Shown here: piece by piece, positions 10,153-59,201 of the stretch
Numbering within the stretch: position 1 is the first letter of the stretch
Layout: every line of letters begins with the position of its first letter
Virus record (IMG/VR): IMGVR_UViG_3300007352_000001
Coordinates: 124,001 to 188,000 of that record
Direction: 5' to 3' (one strand)
Length of the DNA stretch: 64,000 nucleotides
The notes under the pieces: model-generated
Databases searched by the model: none
What the model was told of the DNA's origin: nothing
The model's input: the letters and a program-made list of their open reading frames with translations, nothing else
Position numbers and translations under genes: made by a program

Positions 10153-10183
10153 TTGGCACGCTCTTCGCACCTTTGTACCGGTA
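10153..10183 (+). promoter_or_regulatory. sigma54-like repeated promoter motif, copy 1
   Basis: TTGGCACGCTCTTCGCACCTTTGTACCGGTA, identical to the copy at 58286-58316 (minus). Confidence 0.75.
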
Positions 10184-10207
10184 AGCCCTTAGCTGCGGAG
10201 GAAGCGT

Positions 10208-11425
10208 ATGCCAGATCAGAGTCTCAGTCTCGTCGAACTGCTCACCCGTTTCGCGAGGCTGGAGTACAACGTCCTCATGACGGGGCACACCGGCGTCGGC
10301 AAGACGACGGTGGGGCTCCACGTGTGCGAGCGCATCTGCTCGTACCAGGTGAAGTTCTTCAATGCGGCCATCATGGACCCGCAGGTCGAGCTGCTCGGGA
10401 TCCCGACCCCAGACCTCGACTTCGAGCGCCAGCGCGAGCGGATCTTGCGGGTGTTGATCGACTTCGGGTTGAAGGGGACCTTCCGGCCCTTGGAGAGCGA
10501 GACGCCGACCGAGACCTACTCGCGCGTCACGCAGCTGGTCGACACCGCGTTCGACCGGCCGAAGTCGCTGCAGTTCCTGCGCCCGAAGTTCATCGACGAG
10601 TGCGACGTGTTCTTCGTCGACGAAATCAACCGCGCCGAAGTGCAGACGCTGAACGGCATCATGGAGGCGATCCAGTTTGCCACGGTCATGGGCGATCGGC
10701 TGCCGCGCCTCAAGATGACCTGGGCGACGCGCAACCCCGACGGCGACGACATGGGCTACCACGTCCAGCGCATGGACCCGGCCTTGATCCAGCGGTTCCG
10801 GACCTTCGTCGAGGTCGACGCGCAGCCGGCGGTCGACATCCTCGTTGCGTGCGGGCCGATGCGCGAGGCAGTCGCTCGCAACCTGATCGAGTGGTACACC
10901 GCGCTGCAGGAGGGTGTGAAGCTGCACCTGCCGCCACGCCGCTTGGAGTACATCGGCAAGGCGTTCGAGGATGGGCTGCCGCTGGAGTTCGCCATCCCAC
11001 CGTTGGTCGACGTCACCAAGCTGCCGCTCAAGAATCTGGAGACCATGCTGCGCAGCGCGACCAAGTCGACGCTGGTCAGCAAGGATGACCTCTCGACGCC
11101 GGAGAAGCGCGCGGCCTTGATCGGGCGCATGAACGACGGCACGGCCAAGGGGCTCAGTGTCACCGTGCAGGTGCAGAAGATCCTCTCGCACCCGACGGTG
11201 AAGCTGCACAAGTTGATCGAGTACGTCGAGGTCGTCGAGGCGATGCGTTTGGAGACGCGTGTCGGTATGTGGGCCGCGATCGGCACGCGCCTGCTGAATC
11301 AGGTACCGGAGCCGGCCAAGTACGACTTCTCGCAGTTCGGTGCGCAGGAAGAGAGTGCGCGCCGTCTCTTCCGCGTCGCGATCCGCGACGGGTTCTACCA
11401 GGACGTGAAGCCGACGGACATCTGA
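10208..11425 (+). CDS. MoxR-like AAA+ ATPase
   Basis: Walker A GHTGVGKT, Walker B FFVDEINRA, ATRNP, MDPALIQRF. Confidence 0.9.
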   Translation: MPDQSLSLVELLTRFARLEYNVLMTGHTGVGKTTVGLHVCERICSYQVKFFNAAIMDPQVELLGIPTPDLDFERQRERILRVLIDFGLKGTFRPLESETPTETYSRVTQLVDTAFDRPKSLQFLRPKFIDECDVFFVDEINRAEVQTLNGIMEAIQFATVMGDRLPRLKMTWATRNPDGDDMGYHVQRMDPALIQRFRTFVEVDAQPAVDILVACGPMREAVARNLIEWYTALQEGVKLHLPPRRLEYIGKAFEDGLPLEFAIPPLVDVTKLPLKNLETMLRSATKSTLVSKDDLSTPEKRAALIGRMNDGTAKGLSVTVQVQKILSHPTVKLHKLIEYVEVVEAMRLETRVGMWAAIGTRLLNQVPEPAKYDFSQFGAQEESARRLFRVAIRDGFYQDVKPTDI

Positions 11426-13005
11426 TGACCATCGACTACTCCAAGATCCACCTGACCGGTGGCAGCCAGCACGAGCTGTGGAAGATCTCCCGGCCGTGTG
11501 ACTGGCGCTGGCTGCCGCCGGGCTGGGATGACCCGCAGCGGGTCGCCTGGCGTCAGGAGCGCTTCGAGCAGGCGTTGGAGACGATTGACGCCGCTGCGGA
11601 GCACGACCTGTGGATGCAGCTGCGCTTCGCACAGCTCGGGACGCCGAAGTTCCAGGCGCTCCCGATGCCGACGACGGCCGTCGGCCTGCGCCCGAACGGG
11701 CAGATCGAGTACGTGTTCCACCCGCGCTTCTTCGATCTCTGCGAGCCGGAGCGCTTGGTGTTCTCGATCGTCCACGAGCGCTTCCACGTCGACCTCGACC
11801 ACCTGCGTCGCGGCATCGGCAAGCGGCGCAACTTGTGGAACATCGTGATCGACATCGTCGACAATGAGTACTGTCACGCACTCGGCTTCCTGCCGCCGGA
11901 GATTGGCCGCGACTACTGGTCAATCGAGAAGCTGCTGCCCGGCTTCCGTGGCCTTGGGGAGGATGTCGGGGCCGTGGCGGACTTCCGCACGGAGTTCGAC
12001 GCGACGCGCCTCTACGACTTCCTGTTGTCGATCATCGAGAAGATCACCCTGCCGCCGTTCGCCGCGTTCGCTATGGACATAGGGATCGGCATGCCGATCC
12101 CGGATGAGGATGCCGACGACGACGAGTCGATACCGGGTCCTGGCGGGTCGGACGAGGGCGAGGGCGAGGAGGACGACGATGAGGGGAACGATCTTGGTCC
12201 CCCAATCTCGTGGTCGGACGTCGAGGAGGACCCACAGGATCACAACGACTATCAGGACGACGTCGCGGCCAATGGCGGCGCCAACCCGTTTGGGGGTGGT
12301 GGTGGGGGTGCCGGCAAGGGCCGGGGAACCTTCGGCGACTCGATCATGCCGGCAGTGGCCAAGTCGCGTTCGCACACCTGGCTCGACAACTTGGCTGATC
12401 GCGTGCACGGCGAGGTTGTGCGTCGCGTCGAGAAGCAGTGGGCGATCCCGCCGCGTCGGCTGGTCGGGAGCGGACTCTACCCGCATGTGCTCCTGCCGTC
12501 AGTTCGCCGCACCATCGTGCGCACCAAGTCGGTGGTGCTGATCGGCGATTGCTCGGGCTCGATGGCCGGCGTGATCCCGAAGATGCTGCGCCTCTTCTCC
12601 GAGATGATCGACCACTTCACCAGCGGCCACATTCAGCGCAACCCGGTGAAGGTCGATTCGTACGCGTTCGACGATGGGGTGTACCACTGGCCGAAGGAAC
12701 TGATTCAGCGCGGCCGTGCTCCGCACTCCGGCGGGACCAACTTCCAGCGCGTGGCAAACTTCGTCGAGGGTCGTGACGTCACGCTGGAGTCCGGCCACGG
12801 CGGCGCTGGCATCCGCCTGCGGCAGCACCCCGACCTGGTCATCGTGGTCACCGACGGTGAGGATCGCGCGCCGAAGATCAAGTACCCGGACAACTGGGTC
12901 TGGCTCTGCGTTGAGGAGCAGGAGTACCCTGCCTACGTCAGGCGCGACACCAAGGGCATCGGGCAGGTCGTGATGTATGGCGACGTCTACGACGGTTCCT
13001 TCTGA
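11425..13005 (+). CDS. zincin-like metallopeptidase + VWA domain protein (DUF2201-like)
   Basis: PTTAV, HERFH (HExxH), WNIVIDIVDN, acidic linker, MIDAS-like DCSGS, GGTNF, VVTDG. Confidence 0.85.
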   Translation: MTIDYSKIHLTGGSQHELWKISRPCDWRWLPPGWDDPQRVAWRQERFEQALETIDAAAEHDLWMQLRFAQLGTPKFQALPMPTTAVGLRPNGQIEYVFHPRFFDLCEPERLVFSIVHERFHVDLDHLRRGIGKRRNLWNIVIDIVDNEYCHALGFLPPEIGRDYWSIEKLLPGFRGLGEDVGAVADFRTEFDATRLYDFLLSIIEKITLPPFAAFAMDIGIGMPIPDEDADDDESIPGPGGSDEGEGEEDDDEGNDLGPPISWSDVEEDPQDHNDYQDDVAANGGANPFGGGGGGAGKGRGTFGDSIMPAVAKSRSHTWLDNLADRVHGEVVRRVEKQWAIPPRRLVGSGLYPHVLLPSVRRTIVRTKSVVLIGDCSGSMAGVIPKMLRLFSEMIDHFTSGHIQRNPVKVDSYAFDDGVYHWPKELIQRGRAPHSGGTNFQRVANFVEGRDVTLESGHGGAGIRLRQHPDLVIVVTDGEDRAPKIKYPDNWVWLCVEEQEYPAYVRRDTKGIGQVVMYGDVYDGSF

Positions 13006-13927
13006 TCGCATCACGCCGGTCAAAGCGACCGGCACTTTCAAGCCGGCGCTGTGGAACGACCGCGCGTACGTCGCCGAGGAGAAGCTCGACGGTGTTCGCG
13101 CGGTCGTGTACGCCACTGCGGCCGGCGCTCGTGTCATGGTTGGCGAGCGCGACATCACCGCCCAGGTCCCGCACCTGGGCGTGTTGCACGTGCCTGGTCT
13201 CGTGCTCGACGGTGAGCTAGTGCAGAACGCGCTGAGAAGCCCCGAGACCGACCACGTGCCGGGGATCGGCTCGGCCTCAGTCACCGGGATCGTGAACAGT
13301 TCGCCCGGTCGCGCCATCGAGACGCAGAAGCGCGACGGGTTCCTCAAGTTCTATGCCTTCGACTGCCTGCATGTGGGGCGCGTGGGGCGACTCAACATGC
13401 GCACGCAGTCGTGGGAGCGCCGTCGCGCTGCCTTGGTCGACGTTCTGGCTGGGCTACCACGCCCGATTGGCGACAACTACATCGCCGTCCCGGTCGCTGT
13501 ACCGCCACTCACACGCGAGTTCTACCAACGCGTCGTGCTACTCGGGGGCGAGGGGGTGGTACTCAAGCACCGCGAACAGTCCTACACCGGCGTTGGGTGG
13601 GTGAAAGTGAAGTTCCGGACCACGTTGTCGGTAGTGATTGCCGGCATCAACCGTGACCGAGAATCGGTCGCCATCGCGGTCTACGAGGACGGCAAGCTCT
13701 CCTCGGTTGGTGATTGCGGGATCAAAAACACGCAGCTTCGTGCGCAGGCACAGTTGAAACCGCACACCTTGGTCGGTCGTGTGCTCGACGTGCAGGCGTA
13801 TGCGGTCAGTACCCGCGGCAAGCTGCGCAACCCGATCTGGGACCGTCTGCGGCCGGATCTCTTTCCGAAGGCGATCACGCGCGACAAGCTGATCGCGGAC
13901 TTCGAGCAGGCGGTGGAGCACGCGTAG
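12977..13927 (+). CDS. ATP-dependent DNA ligase
   Basis: EEKLDGVR (KxDG), LDGEL, FYAFD, EGVVLK, WVKVK, C-terminal OB fold LRNP...LRPD. Confidence 0.9.
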   Translation: MATSTTVPSDRITPVKATGTFKPALWNDRAYVAEEKLDGVRAVVYATAAGARVMVGERDITAQVPHLGVLHVPGLVLDGELVQNALRSPETDHVPGIGSASVTGIVNSSPGRAIETQKRDGFLKFYAFDCLHVGRVGRLNMRTQSWERRRAALVDVLAGLPRPIGDNYIAVPVAVPPLTREFYQRVVLLGGEGVVLKHREQSYTGVGWVKVKFRTTLSVVIAGINRDRESVAIAVYEDGKLSSVGDCGIKNTQLRAQAQLKPHTLVGRVLDVQAYAVSTRGKLRNPIWDRLRPDLFPKAITRDKLIADFEQAVEHA

Positions 13928-14149: not shown

Positions 14150-14188
14150 GCGCTTCCTCCACTCTCCGCTTGAGTCCACCAAAGGCCT

Positions 14189-14866: not shown

Positions 14867-14870
14867 CGAG

Positions 14871-15248: not shown

Positions 15249-15285
15249 GCTATTGCGAATGATGCTCAATGAGTAGCAAGAACGC

Positions 15286-15313: not shown

Positions 15314-15393
15314 TTACAGGCGAGCATCAACCTGATAGTGCTCGTCGTCCTGTCATCAACTCAAGGGTGCTGACGTGTGTGGGAGAGGGTTGC

Positions 15394-20268: not shown

Positions 20269-20300
20269 CGAACTTTTTTTCACCGCGCGAACTTTTTTCA
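20269..20300 (+). repeat. tandem CGAACTTTTTT(T)CA repeat upstream of the polymerase
   Basis: Two copies in the primase-polymerase intergenic gap. Confidence 0.6.
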
Positions 20301-20354
20301 TCGGCGCGTGGGCCGATTCCTCTTCGAGCGGCATCTATATCGGGTGAGGGTACG

Positions 20355-23713: not shown

Positions 23714-23728
23714 TAAAAATACTCAGAG
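23714..23728 (+). promoter_or_regulatory. TAAAAATACTCAGAG motif, candidate phage promoter
   Basis: Same core as the two copies at 7843/7980 in the opposite orientation; 12 nt before an ATG. Confidence 0.5.
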
Positions 23729-29213: not shown

Positions 29214-29747
29214 ATGCGATACGGAGGATTGCGGTTGCTGGTGCCGCCGCCTACTGACGAAGTGCGCCGAGGGGAACGGCAGTTGCTCCTGGCAATGATG
29301 GACGACGCGCAAACGTGTCTGCGTACGGCGATGACGAACTCCCGCACGTTCTGGGACACCTACGTGTGGATGTACGACCGCAGGTGCTCGGCGCCGTTCT
29401 CCTTCGAGGATACCTGCATCTATCTCCGGCTCGATCCGGAAGCAGTCCGCGATTGCCTGCGCCGCGACTTGCAGCGGCGGTTCCCGAACGGCATCCCACC
29501 GCTCTACGACGAGGACCCGCATGAACAACGTGCCCGAGCCGCTCGCGCCGGGGGTGATGCTCAAGCTCTTTCGTCCCCCAAACCCCAAAACCCAGCAGAT
29601 GGGGTTCGAGATCATCGTGTCCGATCAGAACGACAACGAAGCCGTGCAGCGGCTGAAGCAGCTGGCCAGCGAGATCCGGGGACTCGCCGACCCAGCCTAG
29701 CTGGCACGGCTCCTGCACGTTTGTACCGGTTGGAGGTCTACCAGTGA
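29214..29747 (+). CDS. hypothetical protein (ExxLLLAxxxDA...FSFExxCxxLxLDPxxVR family); 3' part may instead belong to a separate 59-aa ORF 29521-29700
   Basis: Recognisable N-terminal family motif; C-terminus looks off-frame. Confidence 0.55.
   Translation: MRYGGLRLLVPPPTDEVRRGERQLLLAMMDDAQTCLRTAMTNSRTFWDTYVWMYDRRCSAPFSFEDTCIYLRLDPEAVRDCLRRDLQRRFPNGIPPLYDEDPHEQRARAARAGGDAQALSSPKPQNPADGVRDHRVRSERQRSRAAAEAAGQRDPGTRRPSLAGTAPARLYRLEVYQ
29702..29730 (+). promoter_or_regulatory. sigma54-like repeated promoter motif, copy 2
   Basis: TGGCACGGCTCCTGCACGTTTGTACCGGT followed by SD GGAGG and GTG at 29744. Confidence 0.65.
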
Positions 29748-30571
29748 CGATCCGAGAGACGCTTACGGAGCTGGGGGAGGACATCATTCCCCAGCTGGAG
29801 GCGGTCGCCGGCCAGCATATCGAGCCGACCTACCTGACACAGTTCATGGACACGGTGCTGGGCGTCGACGAACCGTTCAGCCCGGACTACGTCCGGGCGA
29901 TCGTTCTCTTCACCATGCAGGTGCCGGGCGTGAAGCCGGCCTGCTACTACGCCGTGTCGAAGTTCTTCACCGACAACGGGTTCAAGGTGCGCATGCAGCG
30001 CACCAAGGGAAAGGGCAAGGCGAATCAGCCCGTCGAGAACACCAAGGCGGTGATGATCACGCCCGCCGCCGCGGCCGAGGAGCAGGCGCAGCGCGACGCG
30101 GCGATCGCCCAGCTCGATCAGGCTGGCCAGGACGCTGCCGCGGCGATCGCTGCTGCAGCTGCCGCCGCGGCGTCCGGTGCCCCGGCCGATCCGAACGCGC
30201 CACCGGTGGAAGGCGTCGAGGTCGAGGACCAGACGCCGAAGAAGCCGACGCCAACGTTCTGCGTCGAGGACGTGTTCTCCTACGCTGGCAGTGTGGCCGA
30301 CGAGGGCTTTCTCACGCTCGCCGAGGGCAGCAAGCAGATCAAGATCAAGCACAGCGTTACCGTGAACCCTGGACGGATCCAGCGCTTGCTGACGACGCTC
30401 GGCACGCAGGGGAAGAAAGCCGGCACGGTGGTGTACGAGACACACGAGTTCCCGCCGGCTGTCTCAGAGAGCGCTGGCACCGGCGCGCCGTCAGGGCACC
30501 GGTTGCGCCGGCTCGTGAAGTGGTACACTGATCAGAACCTCGACGTCCCGGATGGCGTCGCAGCAGAGTGA
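29744..30571 (+). CDS. hypothetical protein
   Basis: SD GGAGG; Ala-rich linker. Confidence 0.75.
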   Translation: MTIRETLTELGEDIIPQLEAVAGQHIEPTYLTQFMDTVLGVDEPFSPDYVRAIVLFTMQVPGVKPACYYAVSKFFTDNGFKVRMQRTKGKGKANQPVENTKAVMITPAAAAEEQAQRDAAIAQLDQAGQDAAAAIAAAAAAAASGAPADPNAPPVEGVEVEDQTPKKPTPTFCVEDVFSYAGSVADEGFLTLAEGSKQIKIKHSVTVNPGRIQRLLTTLGTQGKKAGTVVYETHEFPPAVSESAGTGAPSGHRLRRLVKWYTDQNLDVPDGVAAE

Positions 30572-30643
30572 GCGGCGGTCGGTTAGTCGGTAAACCACGA
30601 GACTCCAAATCTCGGACCGGGGGTTCGATTCCCTCCCGCCGTG
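30572..30643 (+). tRNA. tRNA-Trp(CCA)
   Basis: GCGGCGG/CCGCCGT acceptor, CGAGA-CTCCAAA-TCTCG anticodon arm. Confidence 0.9.
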
Positions 30644-30685
30644 CTCTGAGGTCGCAGCTGATGATGTGGTGTGGTGGAGGTGTGG

Positions 30686-34838: not shown

Positions 34839-35037
34839 GCAGCAATGCTCGAAGACACTACAACCGGCGGCGCGGACCCTTCGCGCTCAGCCCTAGCTGA
34901 GTACCGTCGCCACAAGGTGACACGAGGCGATCTTCACCCGCCGCATGCGTACCAGCCGGTTGTAGAGGGGGAGGGTGGCGCATCCACCCTCCCCCGTCCT
35001 TCGGAAGGGAGTGAAACAGGACCAGCTCTTGGCCAAG
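34837..35037 (+). ncRNA. candidate omegaRNA/sgRNA-like scaffold plus guide
   Basis: GAGCA-GCAA-TGCTC; 11-bp CTACAACCGGC/GCCGGTTGTAG enclosing three hairpins; 12-bp GGGGGAGGGTGG/CCACCCTCCCCC; ends GGAAGGGAGTGAAAC. Confidence 0.45.
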
Positions 35038-36071: not shown

Positions 36072-36125
36072 CAACAATCGTTGAGCCGGCTCGCACGGGG
36101 CGGGCCATTGTGGAAGGAGTGAGCA

Positions 36126-36737
36126 ATGATGCGGATCAAGATCGGTGAGGGTGACGAGGCCGACGACTACGGCGTCGGGTTCGGATACCAGGAGAAGCGG
36201 CGCGGCCGGACGCGGAAGCAGGGCGGAACCCCGCACTTGTCGGTCACAACGACGGCGATCGTCCAGCTGCCCAAGCGGTTCCAGTTTGCCGATGTGTTCG
36301 GCGTCGGGCCGCACCAGACGGACGAGGACGGCACTCTGCGCGGGGTCGTGACGATCCACGATGACGAGGGTGACCCGACGTTGACGGCCGAGGAACGCGC
36401 CAAGCACGCGTTCGTGGTCGAAGTCGTGCAACCGAAGGGCAAGGACGAGGCGCTCGATCGCGTCATGCTGATCGCCAGAACACGGTGCCACTCAGTGGCG
36501 GACGTCTACGATCGCGGCCGTGGCCGGCGCGGGGCGTTGCGCCGAGTGCTGACCGGGTTCAAGCAACTGCTTCCTGACGTCTATCTCGCCAAGGGCGATC
36601 GCCGCAGCGTACTCGCCAAGCAGATCTGGGCGATGTACTTCGACCGCACGCGGGACGGCGTCGAGTTTGGCATGCGCGGCCCGTTTCTGAAGACGGACAA
36701 GAAAGAGGCTGTGCTGGATCCCGCTCCTTTGGAGTGA
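36126..36737 (+). CDS. hypothetical phage protein
   Basis: SD GGAG; C...D.YDR..GR..ALRR motif. Confidence 0.65.
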   Translation: MMRIKIGEGDEADDYGVGFGYQEKRRGRTRKQGGTPHLSVTTTAIVQLPKRFQFADVFGVGPHQTDEDGTLRGVVTIHDDEGDPTLTAEERAKHAFVVEVVQPKGKDEALDRVMLIARTRCHSVADVYDRGRGRRGALRRVLTGFKQLLPDVYLAKGDRRSVLAKQIWAMYFDRTRDGVEFGMRGPFLKTDKKEAVLDPAPLE

Positions 36738-36739
36738 CC

Positions 36740-38167: not shown

Positions 38168-38274
38168 CGCTGGGCCTTGCTCGTGGTGGGGTGAGGTCCG
38201 GTTCTGCCCGAGGCGGTTGGTGTTGGGAAGAGCGCCAGCCGTCTCGGGTTCCACCGAGTGAAAGGAGGAGGGCG

Positions 38275-38937
38275 ATGGCTGTTCGTGATCGGGTACACCG
38301 ATTGGTCACCGGTGCGTTTCATCAGATGATCTCTGCGATCGAGAACCAGGCTCCAGATGCCGTGATGGAGCAGGCGATTCGCGAGGCTGACGAGGCAACC
38401 GAGGAAGCTCGCAGTGAGTTGGCGCAAGTGCTGACGCGACAGCATTTGGCGTCGTCGCGTATCGCACGCGATACGGACGCGCTGCGCGCACTGGACGCGC
38501 AGGTGCAGTTGGCTCTGAAGGAGAAACGAGAGGACCTCGCGCGCGAAGCAGTCGCGCGGCAACTGGACCTCGAAGCGCAACTGTCGGTCGTGCAGGAGGC
38601 GGCGGATCACGAAGCGCATGCACGCGCTGACCTCGAACGCATGATCCTCGCGCTCGATGCCCAGCGGCGAGAGATGCGCGAGGAGTTGGCAGCGTTCCGC
38701 GCTCAGCAGGACCGGGCCGTTCCAGGCGTTGACGCACCACCGATGGGTGGCGTCACGGGGACCGTCGCGGAGCAGCGGGCTCGCCGGGCGAAAGAAGTGT
38801 TCGGCGATGTCATGAGCCGGCAGACGAATCTCCCGCGGCCACTCGGGTCCACCAGCAAGCTCCAAGAGTTGGCGGACCTGGAGCGGACACATCGGATTGA
38901 CGAACGACTCGCTGCTGCGAAGGCACAGCAAGGTTAG
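38275..38937 (+). CDS. pspA: PspA/IM30 family protein (second paralog)
   Basis: R..RLV....H..IS.IE..AP..V.EQAIRE, REDLAREA..RQ, I.ERLAA.K; SD AGGAGG. Confidence 0.85.
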   Translation: MAVRDRVHRLVTGAFHQMISAIENQAPDAVMEQAIREADEATEEARSELAQVLTRQHLASSRIARDTDALRALDAQVQLALKEKREDLAREAVARQLDLEAQLSVVQEAADHEAHARADLERMILALDAQRREMREELAAFRAQQDRAVPGVDAPPMGGVTGTVAEQRARRAKEVFGDVMSRQTNLPRPLGSTSKLQELADLERTHRIDERLAAAKAQQG

Positions 38938-38939
38938 CC

Positions 38940-39626
38940 GTGACTTCCTTCACCTTCCTGCTGCAGGCGGGCGTGTGGCCGTTCACGGCAAGCCTGTCCT
39001 TGGTCGTGGTGCTCGCGATCTTGGAGTTCATGACGTACGTGGCAGGCCTTGGTGGAATCACGCATGCATTCGAGCACGCCTTTGGTGTCGATCTCGATGG
39101 CGACTTCGACATGGCGCACCCAGATTTCTCTCACGGGGGCGTCTTCGTAAAGGCCGTGAACTGGGCGCGGGTGGGAGAACTTCCACTGTCGATCTTACTG
39201 ATCACGTGGTGGTTCCTCTTCGGCATCGTGGGGGTGGGGGCACAATACGCGTCGTCGATCGTGCTTGGTGGTGCCACGATGCCGTTTTGGATCGTGGTCT
39301 GGCCAGTGATGGCCGTGTCGATTGGCGCGTACCGAGGGTGCGCGCGGATCTTTGTGCGGGTCTTGCCGACTGATGTCGAGACGTACGCGGTCGAGCCGTC
39401 GTCGTTCGTCGGAAGGACGGCAACTGTGGTCATGGGTACGGCGACCGTGACCGCCCCTGCTCAAGCTCGCTTGGTGGATCAGTACGGGAACGCGCACTAC
39501 GTCATGGTCGAGCCGAGCGATCCAGAGCAGGCGTTCGCGCCTGGTGCCACCGTGCTGCTTGTTGAACAAAACGACGCGGTATTCCGCGTTATCAACCCGC
39601 CGAGCGCACTGTTACTCGGCACGTGA
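38940..39626 (+). CDS. YqiJ/DUF1449 NfeD-like inner membrane protein
   Basis: PF..SL..V..L..LE, PL.ILL, C-terminal OB fold G.A.V..G.A....PAQARL.DQYG..HYVMVEP. Confidence 0.85.
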   Translation: MTSFTFLLQAGVWPFTASLSLVVVLAILEFMTYVAGLGGITHAFEHAFGVDLDGDFDMAHPDFSHGGVFVKAVNWARVGELPLSILLITWWFLFGIVGVGAQYASSIVLGGATMPFWIVVWPVMAVSIGAYRGCARIFVRVLPTDVETYAVEPSSFVGRTATVVMGTATVTAPAQARLVDQYGNAHYVMVEPSDPEQAFAPGATVLLVEQNDAVFRVINPPSALLLGT

Positions 39627-39639
39627 TGGGGGAGAGCTG

Positions 39640-41436
39640 ATGGAAGGTTTGATCGGAATCGGGATGGTGGTCGCAGTCTGCATGGCCGGGCTGGGTGCGA
39701 TTGCCTTCATGATGTCGCGGCTCTACGTGCGCGCCACGCCCGAGTGGGCACTGGTCCGCAGCGGCTACCGCGGCAAGAAGGTTGTGATCGACGGCGGGTG
39801 CTTCGTCCTGCCGGTCTACCACGAGATCCAGCGGGTCAACATGAAGACGGTGAAGCTCGCCGTCACGCGCCAGCAGCGGGACTCGTTGATCACCAAGGAT
39901 CGGCTGCGCGTCGATGTCATCGTGGAGTTCTACGTCCGCGCCAAGCCGGACGCGACGGCGATCCCGGAAGCGGCTCGGACGCTCGGGGAGCGCACCGCCG
40001 ACCAAGCGGCGCTCAAGGATCTCATCGAGGGCAAAGCGGTCGGCGTGCTGCGTGCGGTTGCGGCGCGCATGACGATGGCAGAGCTGCACGAGGACCGGGC
40101 GAAGTTCGAGCAGGAAGTGCTGAACGGCGTGCAGAAGGACCTGACGAAGAACGGCCTCGAACTGGAGTCGTCGGCGATGACGCACTTCAACCAGACGGCC
40201 AAAGAGTTCTTTGTCGCCGAGAACGCCTTTGACGCCGAAGGGCTCGCAATGCTCACCGCTGCGGTCGAGCAGCGTCGGCAAGAGGTGAACAACATCGAGG
40301 TGACCACGCGCGTGGCGATCGAGACGCGCAATCTCGAAGGGCAGCGGCGATCGTTGCAACTCGCGCAGGATACGCAGGAGGCGATGCTGACTCAGCAGCT
40401 CGCCATCGAGACCGCCACTGCGCAGCGCAAACGTGAGATCGCACAACAGCAGGCAGAGCAGGATCGGCTGGCGCAAGAGGCGCAGATCGCCGCGCAACAG
40501 CAAGTGCAGCTGGCGTCGGTCGAAGCCGAACGGACTGTGCAAGAGGCGAAGGCGCAACAGCACGCCGCCGTGCAACAGGCGCAGATCGCTTCAGAGCGGG
40601 CGGTGAAGGTGGCCGACGAACAGCGCCAGCGTGATGTGGCGGTGGCGGCTGAGGAACGTCAGCGTGACGTGGAAGTGGCCAAACAGGAGCGCAACATCAA
40701 GGTGCAGACCAAGAGCGAGGAGCTGTCGGGTGCCACGGCCAGTGCTGAACGCGCTCGTGCCGAGGCGGTCGTAGCCGAGCAGCAGGTCATCACGGCCCAA
40801 GCGGTGGCCTCCGCGGATCGTGAGAAGCAAGTGGCGGTGATCGCGGCTGAGCGCGAGGCACAGCAGGGGGCGGTCGGCCTGGTGGTCAACGCCAAGGCGC
40901 ATGAGGATGCCGCCGCACACGAGGCCGCAGCTGTCATGGTGAGAGCGACGGCGGATACCGACGCCAAGCGCCTCGCCCTGGAGATCGCGGAGCGTGACTT
41001 CGCGGTCCGCGCCACGGGCACGCGGCTCTTGCACGAGTCCGAGAACGTGCTCGGGCAGTCGGCGATGGACTTGCGGCTGCGCCTGGCCCTGGTCGAGCAC
41101 GCCGCGGCGATGATCACTGCGGCCGGCAAGCCGGTCGAGCACATCAAGGATCTGCGGGTCATTGCCGTGCAGGGCATTCCGGGGCTGGCGGGGCCGTTGC
41201 CGGTGAACGGCGACGGCTCTACCGTTGCCAACGGCACTGGGCACGACGCCGGATTGCCCGACCAGATCGTCAATGCGGCCCTGCGTCACCAGGCGCTCGC
41301 GCCGCTGGTTGGGCTGTTGATGGGGGAGATCGGCATCGACCCCACGACCATGAATGGCATTGCTCGCCCTCTGACTGACATGGCGGTGGCGCGGCCCGCC
41401 CACCCAGCGAACGGAGATGCCCGAGCGTCGAGCTAA
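39640..41436 (+). CDS. flotillin/SPFH protein (YqiK-like)
   Basis: N-terminal TM, LITKDRLRVDV..EFYVR, DL.KNGLELES..MT..NQT, FDAEGL, AE-rich coiled coil. Confidence 0.92.
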   Translation: MEGLIGIGMVVAVCMAGLGAIAFMMSRLYVRATPEWALVRSGYRGKKVVIDGGCFVLPVYHEIQRVNMKTVKLAVTRQQRDSLITKDRLRVDVIVEFYVRAKPDATAIPEAARTLGERTADQAALKDLIEGKAVGVLRAVAARMTMAELHEDRAKFEQEVLNGVQKDLTKNGLELESSAMTHFNQTAKEFFVAENAFDAEGLAMLTAAVEQRRQEVNNIEVTTRVAIETRNLEGQRRSLQLAQDTQEAMLTQQLAIETATAQRKREIAQQQAEQDRLAQEAQIAAQQQVQLASVEAERTVQEAKAQQHAAVQQAQIASERAVKVADEQRQRDVAVAAEERQRDVEVAKQERNIKVQTKSEELSGATASAERARAEAVVAEQQVITAQAVASADREKQVAVIAAEREAQQGAVGLVVNAKAHEDAAAHEAAAVMVRATADTDAKRLALEIAERDFAVRATGTRLLHESENVLGQSAMDLRLRLALVEHAAAMITAAGKPVEHIKDLRVIAVQGIPGLAGPLPVNGDGSTVANGTGHDAGLPDQIVNAALRHQALAPLVGLLMGEIGIDPTTMNGIARPLTDMAVARPAHPANGDARASS

Positions 41437-49090: not shown

Positions 49091-49179
49091 GGGACAGTGG
49101 CCGAGTCCGGCTGAAGGCACCAGTCTCGAAAACTGGCGACGGCGCAAGTCGTCCGAGCGTTCAAATCGCTCCTGTCCCG
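49091..49179 (+). tRNA. tRNA-Ser(CGA)
   Basis: GGGACAG/CTGTCCC acceptor, loop CTCGAAA, long variable arm GACGGC-GCAA-GTCGTC. Confidence 0.93.
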
Positions 49180-49244
49180 CCTTCCCAGGACCGGGAGGAG
49201 TCCCACGGGCTCCTCCCGTGTCCAACCTGGCGACGAGGGTGGTG

Positions 49245-53774: not shown

Positions 53775-53777
53775 GCG

Positions 53778-54547: not shown

Positions 54548-54981
54548 ACGGTCCACGTTTCCAGCGGCGTGACGGCGCCGGGCTTGAAGATCAGCGCGTC
54601 CTGTTGCTCGTAGTCGAACTCGTACCAGGCGTCGTCGCCGGCCTTGGCGACCTCGGCTTTGATCCGCCGGCTGCCGCCATCGCTGACTTTGAGAGACAGT
54701 CCCTGACCGCCGACCCGCACGGCGACGTGGAACCGCTTCACCAACTTGGGCGTGGCGACCTCGATCTCGTCGACGCGGGTGAGGATGCGTGTTGGCTCCG
54801 GTGGGCAACTCCAGTGCGGCCGGGCGACACGCGCCCCGTCGGCATCGTTGAGCGGCGTGAGTCGTTCGGTGGACGGGTCGGATAGGTTCAGCGAGCCCCA
54901 GACCTGCACCCCGCCACGCTTCTCGATCCACTGGCGGATCAGTTCCGCGTTCGAGGCCTTGATGCGGTATCGTTCGCTCAT
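54544..54981 (-). CDS. hypothetical protein
   Basis: SD GGAGG; coupled. Confidence 0.7.
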   Translation of the reverse strand: MSERYRIKASNAELIRQWIEKRGGVQVWGSLNLSDPSTERLTPLNDADGARVARPHWSCPPEPTRILTRVDEIEVATPKLVKRFHVAVRVGGQGLSLKVSDGGSRRIKAEVAKAGDDAWYEFDYEQQDALIFKPGAVTPLETWTV

Positions 54982-55391
54982 GTTGGGGTGCCTCCTCCAA
55001 GCTGCGGACGCAGCTCGTGGCGAATGACGTTGTACACGCTGAGCAACTCAGAACGGCGCGGCTTGCCGGTGCGATAGCGTTCCAGCTCGTCGAAGAGTCG
55101 CAGGAGCAGGACACGCTGGCGATTGGTGATCACGGTTCGCTGCCGTCGGTGTCGGCGTTGCCTGAGTGCTGTGCTCGCGACTTTGGCGATCTCCGTAACG
55201 CCTGCGTCGAAGACCTCGAACTCGCGCGCCATGTCATCGAGCACGGTCCGCGCGATGCGTTGCGGCGACGTGTGGCCACCTTCCCAGCGGTTCACCGTCG
55301 CGAACGAGACGCCGACTCGCGCTGCGAACTCTTCCTGGGTCAGGTCGAGGCGAGCCCGGAGTCTGAGCACCAGCGTTTTGTAGTCGGGCAT
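54978..55391 (-). CDS. XRE-family HTH transcriptional regulator
   Basis: LR.RL.LTQEEFA.RVGVSF.TVNRWE.G...P. Confidence 0.85.
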   Translation of the reverse strand: MPDYKTLVLRLRARLDLTQEEFAARVGVSFATVNRWEGGHTSPQRIARTVLDDMAREFEVFDAGVTEIAKVASTALRQRRHRRQRTVITNRQRVLLLRLFDELERYRTGKPRRSELLSVYNVIRHELRPQLGGGTPT

Positions 55392-56191
55392 CACGCTGCC
55401 AGGCGGTCGATCTTCGGGTAGGGCAAGCTCGTCGGCAGGCGCTTGCGATCGGCCTTCTGGAAGGCCCAGGCGTACTTGTGGTTGCCGACATGGCGCAACG
55501 GGCGGGTGAGCAGCGCCAGGTGCGTCTGGAGCCACGCGAGACGCTCCTGCGCATCCTCCGGGGCCTTCGGCGCGCCGAACGCTTCCAGGATCTCGGCCGA
55601 GTAAACCCAGCCCTGCTCGCCCGCGCGGATCTTCTGGATCGCGCGATCGCTGAACACGGTGCCGTTCGGCAGGATGCGCAGCGTGCGCGCCGTGCCGCGA
55701 CCGAGGTAGACGCCATTGGACGCCTGGTAGATCGTACCGACGTGGCCGGGAAAGATGGTCTGCCCTTCGTCGTCGGTGCGGGCGATCGGGTCGGAGAACG
55801 ACACGACGCCGCGCAGGCCTTCACCACGCAGCTGCTCGAAGCAGCGCGCCAGGAACCAGGTCTCGCCGTTGCCGGCGACGTTGTCGAGGAGCACGAAACG
55901 GCCCAGCTCGACCGATTCCTTGGCCTCGCCGGGGAACACCGAGGTCAGCACCTTGTTCGAGCACGGGTGGCTGAACACTGCCACGCCGGCCAGGTCGCCA
56001 CCGCGGTAGAGCCCGAAGCGGAAGCGGGCCGCGGGGTAGGTCGCCGAGTAGTGGTGTTGGACGACGAAGGCCTTGGCGACGCGGTCGGTGTCGATTGCGG
56101 CGACCTCGAACTCGGCCGTGTTGATGGTCTCACCAGCCGGGCGGTAGGTGTCCCGGCGGTCACGCCAGCGCTGGTTCACGGTGGTCAGCAC
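55391..56191 (-). CDS. Mom-like GNAT-fold DNA (adenine) modification protein
   Basis: FVVQHHYS, FGLY..G.L.GVA.F, EL.RFVLL, ETWFLAR, SFSDP, H.GTIYQASN..Y.G. Confidence 0.8.
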   Translation of the reverse strand: MLTTVNQRWRDRRDTYRPAGETINTAEFEVAAIDTDRVAKAFVVQHHYSATYPAARFRFGLYRGGDLAGVAVFSHPCSNKVLTSVFPGEAKESVELGRFVLLDNVAGNGETWFLARCFEQLRGEGLRGVVSFSDPIARTDDEGQTIFPGHVGTIYQASNGVYLGRGTARTLRILPNGTVFSDRAIQKIRAGEQGWVYSAEILEAFGAPKAPEDAQERLAWLQTHLALLTRPLRHVGNHKYAWAFQKADRKRLPTSLPYPKIDRLAA

Positions 56192-56385
56192 GGGCGGAAG
56201 TCCTCCAGCCACGAGGGGCCGAAGTTGTTGCGGACACGCTGCAGGCTCGCCGCCAGGTCGCCGACGTCGAGCCCTTCGCGGCGGTAGTTGCCGCTGAGCC
56301 AGGCGTTGCGGATGGCTGCCTTGTACTCTCTGCCGAGAAGGTTGCGCGCCCGCTCGACGGCCGCTCGTGCTTCCTGTTCAGTCAT
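56185..56385 (-). CDS. hypothetical protein
   Basis: ATG directly follows the repeated motif. Confidence 0.7.
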   Translation of the reverse strand: MTEQEARAAVERARNLLGREYKAAIRNAWLSGNYRREGLDVGDLAASLQRVRNNFGPSWLEDFRPC

Positions 56386-56414
56386 ACCGGTACAAAGGTG
56401 CGAGAACTATGCCA
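56385..56414 (-). promoter_or_regulatory. sigma54-like repeated promoter motif, copy 3
   Basis: TGGCATAGTTCTCGCACCTTTGTACCGGT-ATG. Confidence 0.75.
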
Positions 56415-56580
56415 ACGTGTACGTGTGGCCTTTGGTGGCGCTCACGTACTTGTCGGCGCCGTACCATTTGACATGGTCGATCTCACCGTCGTCCGAGACG
56501 ATGGTGGACCAGTGGGCCACCGTGTCGACCTTGAAGCGTTTCCTGTCCCCGTCACGGACTAGGGTGTCACCGGGTCGCAC
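56407..56580 (-). CDS. small hypothetical protein (57 aa)
   Basis: GTG start overlapping the upstream stop; MRPGDTLVRDGDRKRFKV... Confidence 0.45.
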   Translation of the reverse strand: MRPGDTLVRDGDRKRFKVDTVAHWSTIVSDDGEIDHVKWYGADKYVSATKGHTYTLA

Positions 56581-56991
56581 GGCGCCCCTCAAACCACCGT
56601 GCCCACCTCGGTAGCTTGGCCTTGATCCCGTCCAGCTGCTCATGGATTCGCGTCTCGTCACCGCGTCCGTGGTCGGCCGCGTCGTAGCAGAGCAAGCAGT
56701 AGAGCCCGAGCTGCCGCAGGACGGTGATCTTCCGTTCCTCCCCGGCGGTGACGTCAGGCCAGAGTCGGGTGACTGCCAGACGGAGGGCGGACTTGCGGTG
56801 GTACTTGGCGAAGTTTCCTGCCGTGCCACAATGCTCGACCGCTGCCGCGTCCGGGTTGCGGAGGGTGTGTACGTGGCGCTCGAACTCCGGCCGGCACGTG
56901 GCGCACAGCAAGTCGGCTTCAGCGGCGCGCTCGCGGCAGTGATGACAGCGTTGGGCGTACGGGATCGGGTTCGGTTCGGTTCGTAGGGCAT
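56567..56991 (-). pseudogene. Zn-finger gene frameshifted by a (GAACC)3 repeat
   Basis: ATG at 56991 joins the CHHC/CATC/CLLC frame only if one GAACC unit is removed. Confidence 0.55.
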
Positions 56992-56996
56992 CACGA

Positions 56997-57431
56997 TCAC
57001 CGGCGAGCGCAGGACGGCGCAGCGGCCTTGAGGCCGGCGCGATCGAGCGCCTCGTCCACTGCTTCCTTGCGACTGCGGCAGAAGGTTGAGGACATCTTGT
57101 CGCCGATGGTGGCGGTCCAGTACCCGCCCCGTCGGCGCCAGACTGCGCCGACGTCCCCACCGTCCGAGAGGATCCGATAGCTGCTCGGGCCGTCGTACTT
57201 GAACGTGATCATCGTCACCTTGCCGAGGGTCAGCACCACGCGATCGCCCGGCTTCGACAGCCGCAGCGCGCGGCGCATCATCGCCAACGCACTCTTCGCC
57301 GCCGGGGCCATGCTCAGGTGAGTCTCTTCGAGCGTGAGCGGGTTGCGTAGGAAGTAGTGCCCGTTCTCGTGCCGGCCCAGCGTCAGGCCGTGCGAGAGTG
57401 CGAAGGCGACCGCGGTCTTGTGCATCTGCAT
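56997..57431 (-). CDS. hypothetical protein
   Basis: ORF in the early-type block. Confidence 0.6.
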   Translation of the reverse strand: MQMHKTAVAFALSHGLTLGRHENGHYFLRNPLTLEETHLSMAPAAKSALAMMRRALRLSKPGDRVVLTLGKVTMITFKYDGPSSYRILSDGGDVGAVWRRRGGYWTATIGDKMSSTFCRSRKEAVDEALDRAGLKAAAPSCARR

Positions 57432-57443
57432 GGTGAGTGCCCT

Positions 57444-58286
57444 TCACTTCGCCTTGCGCTGGATCTTCGGCCAGCGGGTCTTGTCGCGCGCGATCGCCTT
57501 CTCGTCGTCGACGTTGGACGCATGCTTGGTAGCCAAGGCGAGGGCGACCAGGTCGGCGCGATCGGCGTGGCTAGAGCGTATGCGCGGCGCGTCCTCACGA
57601 TCGGTCTGCTCGTTCCAGTAGTCGACGTCGCGCAGCTCGCGGGCCAGATCCTCGTACGCGGACCGCTCGGTGTTGTAGAGCACCCAGCCCTTGACGGGGT
57701 GAAGGACGGCCTTCGCCAGCTTCTCGGCGCGCTTGGTATCGCGCTCAGCCTTGCGGGCTTCCTTCGCTTCACGCGCCTCGCGGCCGACGCGCCCCTCGCC
57801 CCAGAACTTCGAGGCCGGCGCCGACGGGAAGCAGACGGTGCACATCGTCTCGCCGTATTCCTTGACCGCTTCCTCTTCGGTCGCGCCGGAGAGGGTGAAC
57901 ACCCATGAATACTGCGTGGTCGGGAAGCAGGTCGAGCAGCCGCGCGTGCTGTGGACGTGGCCGTTGCCGTTGGTGACCAGGTAGAAGCGTGACCAGGGGC
58001 GCCGCGCGTATTCCTCGTGCAGCGGCGCCGCCGCGGCGCGGGCGGCATCGCGCTTGCGCGTGTACGCGGCGACCTCGGCTTCCGCCTCATCGAGTCCATG
58101 GAACCGGAAGTCCGGGCCGTACCTGTCGGGATGCCGCTCGTGCAGTAGCTTCGAGTCCTCCAGCAGGCGCTCGACACGGTTGGTCAGGTAGGACAGCCGG
58201 AAGATCGCGTCGTACTCGATCCCCACCAGGCGGGCCAACTCGGTGTCGATCTCGACCGGCGTCTGCGTGCTGAGTGGCTTCGACAT
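57444..58286 (-). CDS. hypothetical protein
   Basis: ATG directly after the motif; H.H....CSTC, CTVCFP motifs. Confidence 0.75.
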   Translation of the reverse strand: MSKPLSTQTPVEIDTELARLVGIEYDAIFRLSYLTNRVERLLEDSKLLHERHPDRYGPDFRFHGLDEAEAEVAAYTRKRDAARAAAAPLHEEYARRPWSRFYLVTNGNGHVHSTRGCSTCFPTTQYSWVFTLSGATEEEAVKEYGETMCTVCFPSAPASKFWGEGRVGREAREAKEARKAERDTKRAEKLAKAVLHPVKGWVLYNTERSAYEDLARELRDVDYWNEQTDREDAPRIRSSHADRADLVALALATKHASNVDDEKAIARDKTRWPKIQRKAK

Positions 58287-58316
58287 ACCGGTACAAAGGT
58301 GCGAAGAGCGTGCCAA
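58286..58316 (-). promoter_or_regulatory. sigma54-like repeated promoter motif, copy 4
   Basis: TTGGCACGCTCTTCGCACCTTTGTACCGGT-ATG. Confidence 0.75.
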
Positions 58317-58946
58317 TCAGTCCCCCAGGAACCTGTTGCGATTGTCCATGGGGATGAGGGCGCCGTGCCCAGCGTCGACGATTGCTTGGTAGAGTCGCCT
58401 AGCACCTGCTTTGAGGTGTGCGACTTGTACCGGGTCGATGTGGGCGAGCCAGTGAACCTGGTCGACGGTGTAGCTGGCTGGATGACTCGCCGGCAGCTGC
58501 AGGACGTCGTTCAGTACCTTGCGTAGATCGTGCGCGACCTTCAGCGGCTTCCTTGGGTCGTCAGGCTTCGCCACTGGCGGCTTGAGCCCTTGGCGGAAGA
58601 GTGCCTGGCGAAGTGCGTTGCCGCCGAAGTCGTAGTGATCCGACCGGCCGACGTAGATGTACGGCGCCGCACTCTCGAACACCCAGCGTGTCGGGTCATA
58701 GACGCGACCGTCTGGAAGGTCGATCCAGCCGTGGTTCGAGAACGGCCGGCCCGTGAAGATGTTCCCTTCGGCGATCGGGCCGTGCCAGATGCCGTACGAG
58801 AGCTGTGAACGTGCCGGCAGAAGCTCAGAACGAAAGACCTGTGACGCAACCTGGTAGCAGTGACCAGGCCATCCTTCGACCGGCCAGTTGATCAGGGCGG
58901 CAACGGTCCGCACGTCGAGTGCGCGTTTGCTGAGACGAGTCGGCAT
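58317..58946 (-). CDS. hypothetical protein
   Basis: G.CY..A, HGW...DG...DPT motif; follows the motif. Confidence 0.7.
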   Translation of the reverse strand: MPTRLSKRALDVRTVAALINWPVEGWPGHCYQVASQVFRSELLPARSQLSYGIWHGPIAEGNIFTGRPFSNHGWIDLPDGRVYDPTRWVFESAAPYIYVGRSDHYDFGGNALRQALFRQGLKPPVAKPDDPRKPLKVAHDLRKVLNDVLQLPASHPASYTVDQVHWLAHIDPVQVAHLKAGARRLYQAIVDAGHGALIPMDNRNRFLGD

Positions 58947-58977
58947 CTATCGGGACAAAGGTGCGAGAGGTATGCCA
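58946..58977 (-). promoter_or_regulatory. sigma54-like repeated promoter motif, copy 5
   Basis: TGGCATACCTCTCGCACCTTTGTCCCGATAG-ATG. Confidence 0.7.
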
Positions 58978-59003
58978 CCGATCGCGTCGATCTGCTAGAG
59001 GAG

Positions 59004-59034
59004 TTGGCACAATCCCTGCACTTTTGTCCCGGTA
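59004..59034 (+). promoter_or_regulatory. sigma54-like repeated promoter motif, copy 6 (divergent from copy 5)
   Basis: TTGGCACAATCCCTGCACTTTTGTCCCGGT-ATG. Confidence 0.7.
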
Positions 59035-59201
59035 TGGATGCATTGACCGCTGAGTTGTTGGAGGCCGCAAAGCAGGTGTTCGAGTCGACCACTGAGTGCC
59101 GGCACGGCCACTGGTTGGTGCCGAATGCAGCGGTGCGTCGCCTGGTCGTCGCGACTGAGGCCCTCGATCCAACCTGGCGCCCGGCCTCGGAGGAAGCGTG
59201 A
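59034..59201 (+). CDS. small hypothetical protein
   Basis: ATG directly after the motif; stop coupled to the next gene. Confidence 0.6.
   Translation: MDALTAELLEAAKQVFESTTECRHGHWLVPNAAVRRLVVATEALDPTWRPASEEA

What the first reader, a model, noticed from the sequence alone, without database searches (positions are those of the whole stretch)
10153..59036. Six-copy ~30-bp motif with sigma54 -24/-12 geometry driving near-leaderless phage genes
Seen: consensus TGGCAY-N5-Y(C/T)GCAC(C/G/T)TTTGT(A/C)CCG(G/A)T at 10153(+), 29702(+), 56385-56414(-), 58286-58316(-), 58946-58977(-) and 59004(+). Copies 1 and 4 are identical over 31 bp. In four cases an ATG follows within 0-2 nt of the motif with no SD, and copies 5/6 are back-to-back divergent. 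Known: sigma54 promoters are TGGCAC-N5-TTGC with the start about 12 nt after GC, and they need an AAA+ enhancer-binding protein. Inference: phage early transcription uses host sigma54 and makes near-leaderless mRNAs. The conserved tail across the melting region might allow activator bypass or bind a phage factor. No enhancer-binding protein is encoded in the window.
Basis: partly seen in the sequence, partly recalled or inferred. Interest (0 to 1): 0.8.

Follow-up and report, generated by a model that had tools for sequence, protein, structure and literature searches.

The report
Phage promoter family with sigma-54 architecture
A 241-kb uncultured T4-like jumbo phage carries 15 near-identical 31-bp elements that are almost certainly promoters for short-leader or leaderless mRNAs; their first half is a textbook sigma-54 -24/-12 site, but whether host sigma-54 or an unrecognised phage factor reads them could not be settled.

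Summary
The motif is real and far from chance. The window holds seven copies: the six reported, plus one cut by the window's left edge. About 81% of the 241-kb circular phage genome could be read, and a pattern scan covered the whole contig. Together they give 15 copies where about 1 core match is expected. Every sigma-54 core match carries the same 3' tail. Related copies occur in two other metagenomic phages.

Each copy lies just upstream of a gene and points the same way. It often fills the whole gap between a stop codon and the next start. In 8 of 15 the start codon lies inside or directly after the motif; the rest have a Shine-Dalgarno leader of 12-36 nt. A promoter is the only reading that fits the three divergent junctions.

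The GG-N10-GC spacing and TGGCA...GCA blocks match sigma-54 promoters; two copies differ from E. coli glnAp2 at 1 of 15 core bases.

Against simple sigma-54 use:
- I found no enhancer-binding protein, sigma-54 or other sigma/RNAP gene.
- There is no shared upstream activator site.
- The conserved tail is unexplained.
- The host is unresolved; one gene family points to Actinobacteria, which lack sigma-54.

The driven genes (replication, anti-restriction, nucleotide metabolism) look delayed-early or middle rather than immediate-early.

The parts
1..23 (-). Seventh motif copy, cut by the window edge. TGGCACGCGATTCGCAG... continues left of the window as ...GTTTGCACCGGTAGGAGG, then ATG.
   Evidence: window 7-23, minus strand, 1 mismatch. 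The full copy in L088:443 scores 28.8 bits.
10154..10184 (+). Motif copy 1, at a divergent junction. It has a 24-nt leader with GGAGGA before the ATG at 10208.
   Evidence: (50.4 bits).
10208..11425 (+). First gene after copy 1: a MoxR-type AAA_5 ATPase, not an EBP (no GAFTGA motif, no match to PspF). DUF2201, ligase, helicases, primase, DNA polymerase, a gp32-like protein and RecA/UvsX follow on the same strand.
29702..29732 (+). Motif copy 2. It starts 1 nt after a TAG stop and has a 12-nt leader with GGAGG before the GTG at 29744.
   Evidence: (39.3 bits).
29744..30571 (+). First gene after copy 2 (275 aa, unknown function). The operon continues through a PDDEXK nuclease, PspA x2, RtcB, YqiJ, flotillin, NAMPT, NUDIX and dCMP deaminase.
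56384..56414 (-). Motif copy 3. The ATG at motif position 30 (56385) opens a 66-aa frame; Mom-like and HTH_3 genes follow.
   Evidence: (56.6 bits).
58285..58315 (-). Motif copy 4. It fills the whole gap between the stop of 58317-58946 and the ATG at 58286 of a 280-aa gene.
   Evidence: 52.5 bits. The gene call with this ATG is on record. Homologues align from residue 1-5.
58947..58977 (-). Motif copy 5, with the ATG at position 32 (58946) of a 209-aa gene. It is divergent with copy 6.
   Evidence: (43.4 bits).
59005..59035 (+). Motif copy 6, with the ATG at position 30 (59034) of a 55-aa frame. It heads the plus-strand block with a PIF1/Dda-like helicase and an SbcC-like ATPase.
   Evidence: 48.8 bits.

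Best explanation
The 31-bp element is a self-contained promoter. It is used 15 times in a circular 241-kb T4-like jumbo phage to start delayed-early or middle transcription units: replication, recombination, anti-restriction, nucleotide and NAD metabolism, and RNA repair.

Its 5' half, TGGCA(C/T)-N5-YYGCA, is read like a sigma-54 -24/-12 promoter, most likely by host sigma-54 holoenzyme. That places the transcription start at the GG of CCGGT. The mRNAs would then begin 5'-GGUAUG... (3-nt leader) or 5'-GGUAGGAGG... (Shine-Dalgarno sequence at the very 5' end).

The invariant 3' half, C-N-TTTG-NN-CCGGTA, covers the region that must melt. I infer that it is the determinant through which promoter opening is triggered. 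The trigger could be an unrecognised phage protein made from the motif-free early genes, or a host activator acting from solution. No enhancer site accompanies the element.

Shown: the motif, its copy number, its orientation and position relative to genes, its conservation in other phages, the absence of a recognisable EBP, sigma or RNAP gene, and the absence of a common upstream site.

Inferred: promoter function, the start point, sigma-54 involvement, the role of the tail, and the temporal class.

The confidence given (0.45) is for the sigma-54 reading; that the element is a promoter at all I put at about 0.9.
For: Promoter function:
- All copies lie directly upstream of a gene and point the same way. 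Several fill the whole stop-to-start gap.
- At three divergent junctions the motif is essentially the only intergenic DNA: window 10021-10207, window 58947-59033, and L030 4206-4240.
- Gene calls and homologue alignments confirm that translation starts at the motif's ATG: P0002 aligns from residue 1-5 and the ArdC-like protein from residue 1-4. No Shine-Dalgarno sequence lies upstream, so the 5' end must be close.
- There is no RNA structure (z-scores -0.65 to +2.25) and no Rfam family.

Sigma-54 type:
- TGGCA is invariant, and the GCA of the -12 block is invariant or nearly so (G in 25 of 26 sites). The 10-bp offset between the GG and GC dinucleotides is fixed. The spacer varies.
- The copies at 114.5 and 197.2 kb read TGGCACAGATCTCGC, against E. 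coli glnAp2 TGGCACAGATTTCGC taken from NC_000913.3.
- The start predicted from the -12 GC falls 2-4 nt before the ATG or directly before the Shine-Dalgarno sequence in every copy.
- No TANNNT -10 element sits at a workable distance (sequence).
- The motif is better conserved than the proteins in a distantly related phage, as expected if a conserved machine reads it.
- Precedent: Pseudomonas phage YuA has a sigma-54-like promoter (PMC10914365).
- Host clues favouring a sigma-54-bearing Gram-negative: a 149-aa single-domain GH24 lysozyme whose 2,780 phage matches are led by Gram-negative hosts, with a Brucella phage as the best match; a GT9 domain; and flotillin, whose only recovered genome matches are Rhizobiaceae and Ahrensia.
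Against: - No bEBP was found: no Sigma54_activat hit, no GAFTGA motif in any frame, and no tblastn match to E. coli PspF at E<2.9. No sigma-54 homologue was found either (RpoN tblastn E>2.7). This covers 194.8 kb, 81% of the genome.
- No k-mer is shared in the 200 bp upstream beyond shuffled expectation.
- Two copies sit back to back 27 bp apart, leaving no room for an enhancer.
- The core never occurs without the tail (15 of 15), and the tail is conserved in other phages. Sigma-54 recognition does not explain this.
- Position -14 is C in most copies, where the consensus has T.
- The host is unknown. P0002 homologues occur only in actinophages (318 of 318 records), and Actinomycetota lack sigma-54 (PMC12316311, PMC3162934).
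- No 5'-end data could be obtained.
- Promoters silent without an activator would be an unusual choice for a phage's main programme.
Confidence: 0.45

Rival explanations
1. A phage-specific promoter class read by an unrecognised phage-encoded specificity factor working with host core RNAP. This could be a divergent sigma (like SPO1 gp28 or T4 gp55) or an activator plus sigma-remodelling pair (like T4 MotA/AsiA). The likeness to sigma-54 sites would then be convergent.
For: - The whole 31 bp is conserved, including 19 bp that sigma-54 does not read.
- There is no EBP and no upstream site.
- The motif is absent from the likely immediate-early block and from the T4-like structural module, the pattern of a middle class that depends on an early phage product.
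- Dozens of 150-300-aa proteins have no family match and could hide such a factor.
- Phage YuA has a 9-copy conserved promoter motif that is inactive without phage factors.
- This reading works whether or not the host has sigma-54, so it fits the actinophage link of P0002.
- The 12-bp gap between TGGCAC and TTTGNN equals the T4 MotA-box to -10 spacing (established knowledge).
Against: - No sigma70_r2/r4, MotA, AsiA or RNAP family hit appears anywhere, even at weak thresholds in the precomputed tables.
- The would-be -10 (NTTTGN) lacks the A at -11 that sigma-70-family factors need.
- The spacing between the two blocks is too short for a normal sigma-70-family -35/-10 pair.
- A 14-of-15 match to the glnAp2 core, with variability confined to the sigma-54 spacer, would have to be coincidence.
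Confidence: 0.35
2. The conserved tail, or the whole element, is mainly an operator for a phage DNA-binding regulator, for example the HTH_3 protein at 54978-55535, overlaid on weak promoters. This would resemble stoperators or start-associated sequences of actinophages.
For: - The copies are very uniform.
- The tail contains the palindrome ACCGGT in several copies.
- An HTH gene is itself driven by copy 3.
- Repeated start-associated motifs are known in actinophages (from memory).
Against: - The element as a whole is asymmetric and strictly oriented with the genes.
- ACCGGT is not conserved: the commoner form is CCCGGT, with GCCGAT also present.
- A promoter is still needed at the divergent junctions, and nothing else is there.
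Confidence: 0.08
3. An RNA-level signal inside polycistronic transcripts, such as a processing site or a RegA-like translational operator overlapping start codons, and not a promoter.
For: Most copies lie between co-directional genes and abut start codons. T4 RegA sites overlap AUGs (established knowledge).
Against: - The divergent copies have no upstream room for another promoter.
- There is no conserved structure, and folding is weaker than in shuffles for five of six copies.
- Conservation extends 29 nt upstream of the AUG but stops at it.
- Copies with 12-36-nt leaders keep the motif at the 5' side, not next to the start codon.
Confidence: 0.05

Closest known systems
Bacterial sigma-54 (-24/-12) promoters, e.g. 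E. coli glnAp2
   Same: TGGCA and GCA blocks, a fixed 10-bp offset between the GG and GC dinucleotides, and a variable spacer. The core differs from glnAp2 at 1 of 15 bases. The predicted start is compatible with all gene starts.
   Different: The extra 15-bp invariant tail across the melting region. No upstream activator site. No EBP in the phage. 15 near-identical copies in one replicon. Position -14 is mostly C. Host sigma-54 is unverified.
Pseudomonas phage YuA promoters (one sigma-54-like promoter, plus a 9-copy phage-specific motif)
   Same: A phage with a sigma-54-like promoter, and separately a highly conserved multi-copy promoter motif thought to need phage factors (PMC10914365).
   Different: In YuA these are two different elements, and the sigma-54-like site is single. 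Here one element combines both properties and governs many operons.
T4 middle promoters (MotA box at -30 plus sigma-70 -10)
   Same: The same phage superfamily (T4-type portal, gp21, gp23, gp13). The same kinds of genes are driven. An upstream box lies 12 bp from a downstream block.
   Different: No TAnnnT -10 element and no MotA or AsiA homologue found. The box sequence is unrelated.
Start-associated sequences of Cluster K mycobacteriophages (recalled from memory)
   Same: A repeated motif immediately upstream of the start codons of a subset of genes.
   Different: Those are 13 bp and contain the ribosome-binding site. This element is 31 bp, lacks one, and often contains the start codon itself.

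Membership tests
sigma-54-dependent promoter | Conserved GG and GC dinucleotides exactly 10 bp apart (-24/-12) | tested here: met
   15 of 15 copies in this genome and 25 of 26 sites across three phages.
sigma-54-dependent promoter | Extended consensus TGGCAC-N5-TTGCW | tested here: met
   TGGCA is invariant and the A after GC is invariant. Position -14 is C instead of T in most copies, as in E. coli glnAp2 (TTCGC).
sigma-54-dependent promoter | Transcription starts 11-13 nt downstream of the -12 GC | not testable with these tools
   Only two low-coverage runs hold the phage and they are probably DNA; no molecule ends were reported. The positions of start codons and Shine-Dalgarno sequences are compatible.
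sigma-54-dependent promoter | The organism supplying RNAP has rpoN | tested here: inconclusive
   The host is unknown. The lysozyme, GT9 domain and flotillin point to Gram-negatives. The P0002 family occurs only in actinophages. The phage has no RpoN homologue in 81% of its genome.
sigma-54-dependent promoter | Activation by an AAA+ enhancer-binding protein, usually from a site 80-150 bp upstream | tested here: not met
   No EBP gene. No shared upstream element. A host EBP acting from solution cannot be excluded.
T4-type middle promoter | Sigma-70 -10 TAnnnT, with MotA and AsiA genes | tested here: not met
   No TAnnnT at a workable distance. No MotA or AsiA family hit in any scan.
Single-subunit (T7-like) or multisubunit (phiKZ-like) phage RNAP promoter | The phage encodes its own RNA polymerase | tested here: not met
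   No RNA_pol family hit in 81% of the genome (same calls). The unread 45 kb lies inside the structural module.
Structured cis-regulatory RNA | Conserved secondary structure or a match to an Rfam family | tested here: not met

The most novel reading that the evidence does not exclude
A T4-like jumbo phage runs its whole delayed-early programme from sigma-54 promoters while encoding no enhancer-binding protein. The invariant tail over the melting region would let a small phage protein open the sigma-54 closed complex without a classical AAA+ enhancer system. A host activator freed by infection stress could do the same, for example a PspF-type EBP acting from solution, later shut off by the phage's own two PspA homologues.
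Probability: 0.3. Interest if true: 0.85.

Novelty: new variant of a known kind. Interest (0 to 1): 0.6.

Why it matters
Sigma-54 promoters are the one bacterial class that stays silent until an ATPase opens them. No phage is known to base a temporal gene class on them. If these 15 elements are read by sigma-54, the phage must have a way to fire them without an enhancer. That would be a natural activator-bypass or a new activator type, of interest for transcription mechanism and for orthogonal expression tools. If they are read by a hidden phage factor, the element marks a new promoter class that imitates sigma-54 geometry. The element itself gives a handle for finding that factor. In either case the element gives a ready-made operon map for an uncultured deep-subsurface jumbo phage, and shows heavy use of leaderless or 3-nt-leader mRNAs.

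Tried and rejected
- **Read mapping:** the only two runs holding the phage are low-coverage wastewater libraries, probably DNA, stored as contigs. They give no 5'-end information.
- **Complex prediction** of E. coli sigma-54 with the motif DNA: the job was not folded for this kind of complex, so it counts neither way.
- **Close relatives:** searches through the motif-proximal proteins P0004 and P0002 in IMG/VR returned only the contig itself. A megablast of window 56000-60000 (which includes P0002 and P0003), and tblastn searches with the 11269-13005 product and with P0003, found nothing in cultured phages.
- **Host assignment:** the results conflict.
  - The P0002 family occurs only in actinophages.
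  - The GH24 lysozyme matches mostly Gram-negative phages.
  - ArdC is about 40% identical to everything.
  - The exonuclease matches mostly proteobacterial phages.
  - The nearest RtcB clusters are Acidobacteriota.
  - The only flotillin matches recovered are Rhizobiaceae and Ahrensia at 38-41%.
  - The tail-fibre-like protein was uninformative.
  - There is no WhiB-like protein.
- **Alternative promoter models, rejected on spacing or on a start point falling behind the start codon:**
  - sigma-70 or actinobacterial -10 for leaderless genes
  - ECF-type -35/-10
  - sigma-28 GCCGATAA-like -10
  - Bacteroidetes TAnnTTTG
  - phiKZ-type TATG
- **Single matches in other contigs** (L015/L053, L019, L022-24, L058 and others) are at the number expected by chance for the pattern (my estimate) and lie in unrelated sequence.
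- **The sigma-70 consensus scan** of the large divergent early intergenic region found nothing.


Full report
**What the window is.** The portal gene retrieves the window at 100% identity on IMGVR_UViG_3300007352_000001, a 241,426-bp contig. The window is contig positions 124001-188000. The same genome was assembled at the same length but with another start point in sample 3300007351, and the offsets differ by 99 bp. The genome is therefore circular or terminally redundant. The samples are deep-mine fracture fluids (PMC8478452). Traces of the phage occur in two wastewater runs.

GC content is 64.5%. The phage has T4-type morphogenesis genes: portal gp20, protease gp21, capsid gp23 and neck gp13. 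No protein tested is more than about 50% identical to a cultured phage's, and the portal, polymerase and RecA are only 25-34% identical.

**The observation.** All six reported copies are present. A seventh is cut by the window's left edge. Two pattern scans of IMG/VR, together with walking the contig by the look-up of encoding contigs, raise the count to 15 copies plus one degenerate copy.

In contig coordinates the copies lie at about 13.9, 113.9, 114.5, 119.3, 124.0, 134.2, 153.7, 180.4, 182.3, 183.0 (two, divergent), 195.5, 197.2, 204.6 and 208.7 kb.

A weight matrix gives 39-57 bits for 14 copies and 28.8 bits for one. Nothing else exceeds 16 bits. In the 194.8 kb I could read, the sigma-54 core TGGCAY-N5-YYGCA occurs 15 times against 0.96 in shuffles. 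Each occurrence carries the same tail. It is the only repeat family in the window that stands out as a recurring intergenic element.

**Anatomy.** An alignment of 26 sites from three phages shows these invariant or nearly invariant blocks: TGGCA, (G)CA(C), TTT(G) and (C)CG. Their spacing is fixed, and the 5-nt spacer varies. No shared sequence lies upstream.

Every copy points toward the adjacent gene. Many begin 0-3 nt after the previous stop codon and fill the whole intergenic gap.

Downstream of the 15 copies:
- In seven, the ATG at motif position 30 opens the gene.
- In one, the ATG is at position 32.
- In one, the motif's ATG opens only a 7-codon frame. The gene starts about 10-16 nt later behind GGGAG.
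- In six, a Shine-Dalgarno sequence follows, in three of them immediately (GGTAGGAGG).

The motif-embedded starts are real. JGI's gene calls use them. Homologues align from residue 1-5 for the 280-aa protein P0002 and for the ArdC-like protein.

**Why it is a promoter.** At three divergent junctions the motif is essentially the only non-coding DNA. These are window 10021-10207, window 58947-59033 with two back-to-back copies 27 bp apart, and L030 4206-4240. Genes whose ATG has no Shine-Dalgarno sequence need a 5' end close by. The RNA has no conserved fold; five of six copies fold less well than shuffles. No Rfam family matches.

The motif is absent from the T4-like structural module, from the rest of the 100 kb between 13.9 and 113.9 kb, and from a block of about 45 tiny genes at 213-226 kb that looks immediate-early.

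The genes it drives:
- helicases, primase, DNA polymerase, a gp32-like protein and RecA/UvsX
- ligase
- ArdC and a Mom-like protein
- dCMP deaminase and NAMPT/NUDIX
- RtcB and PspA

This is what T4 expresses as delayed-early or middle genes. Assigning the motif to that class is my inference.

**Why it looks like sigma-54.** The GG and GC dinucleotides are offset by exactly 10 bp. The invariant letters are those of the sigma-54 consensus TGGCAC-N5-TTGCW, and the variable letters are its spacer. The copies at 114.5 and 197.2 kb read TGGCACAGATCTCGC. E. coli glnAp2, read from NC_000913.3, is TGGCACAGATTTCGC.

Counting from the -12 C puts +1 at the first G of CCGGT. That is 3 nt before the ATG, or directly before the Shine-Dalgarno sequence, in every copy.

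No sigma-70-family model fits:
- There is no TANNNT at -12 to -7 of any plausible start.
- ECF or sigma-28 readings of the tail would start transcription behind the start codon.

The second phage, from metagenome Ga0187893/4 (L042-44, L052, L063, L065, L066, L080), shares few genes with this one. It keeps the full element in at least 10 copies. Each is followed 2-5 nt later by GTG or ATG, and several open a paralogous MPRHxDF family. A closer relative with a 75% identical portal (L003) has a copy whose tail has diverged.

**Why sigma-54 is not established.**
- I found no enhancer-binding protein. Pfam scans of about 75 window reading frames found none, and neither did the precomputed Pfam tables for the other loci. 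No frame contains GAFTGA. tblastn with E. coli PspF and RpoN gives nothing better than E=2.7. All this covers 81% of the genome.
- The only AAA+ ATPase of the EBP-related clade, directly after copy 1, is a MoxR/AAA_5 protein.
- There is no common upstream element.
- The tail is unexplained by sigma-54 recognition, yet it is obligatory.
- The host is unresolved.

Host clues for a Gram-negative (most of which have sigma-54):
- a 149-aa single-domain GH24 lysozyme whose 2,780 phage matches are overwhelmingly from Gram-negative hosts
- a GT9 domain
- flotillin, whose only recovered genome matches are Rhizobiaceae and Ahrensia

Host clue for an actinobacterium: the P0002 family is found only in actinophages, 318 of 318 records. 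Actinomycetota effectively lack sigma-54 (PMC12316311, PMC3162934). The other genes tested were uninformative.

**Verdict.** The element is a promoter with about 0.9 confidence.

Which machinery reads it is open:
- about 0.45 that sigma-54 holoenzyme reads it, with the tail serving an unconventional activation step
- about 0.35 that an unrecognised phage specificity factor does
- the remainder for operator or RNA-level readings

The only precedent I found for phage use of sigma-54 is a single sigma-54-like promoter in Pseudomonas phage YuA. A whole promoter class of this architecture with an obligatory tail has not, as far as I could find, been described.

Noticed in passing
window 23714-23728 (+), 7980-7994 (-), 7843-7854 (-): A second, AT-rich repeated motif, TAAA(AA)TACTCAGAG. 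It sits 20 nt before gene 23741 (next to the gp32-like gene) and twice in the 741-bp gap near the tRNA cluster. It resembles the T4 late promoter TATAAATA.
   Followed up: partly
window 20271-20305: Direct repeat CGAACTTTTTT(T)CA, present twice in the gap upstream of the DNA polymerase gene (20355).
   Followed up: no
window 34128-41436: An island of host-like membrane-stress and RNA-repair genes in a phage: two PspA/IM30 homologues, RtcB, YqiJ and a flotillin. In E. coli, pspA and rtcB are themselves sigma-54-controlled (established knowledge).
   Followed up: partly
L031 2373-3530 (contig about 191.4-192.5 kb): A TubZ/PhuZ-like tubulin gene, in a T4-type rather than phiKZ-type jumbo phage.
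   Followed up: no
L033 8220-13095: Eight tandem genes of about 184-224 aa, probably a paralogue array, next to a 379-bp divergent intergenic region that heads a block of about 45 tiny genes.
   Followed up: no
L031 19622-19652 (+) (contig about 208.7 kb): One motif copy points into the 3' ends of genes called on the opposite strand. A 57-aa plus-strand frame with GC3 0.86 starts at its ATG. Either the gene calls are wrong or the copy makes an antisense RNA.
   Followed up: partly
L031 15563-15615: In one copy the conserved ATG opens only a 7-codon frame that overlaps the real start. GGTATG is therefore conserved as part of the element, not only as a start codon.
   Followed up: yes
window 3796-3964, 8724-9182, 30572-30644, 49091-49181: Seven tRNA genes: Phe, His, Thr, Lys, Ser (two) and Trp.
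   Followed up: no
whole contig: Two independent assemblies of identical length with permuted starts and a 99-bp offset discrepancy, indicating a complete circular or terminally redundant genome.
   Followed up: partly
L044 6646-7260: The related phage from metagenome Ga0187893 encodes an HU/IHF-type DNA-bending protein near its motif copies.
   Followed up: no
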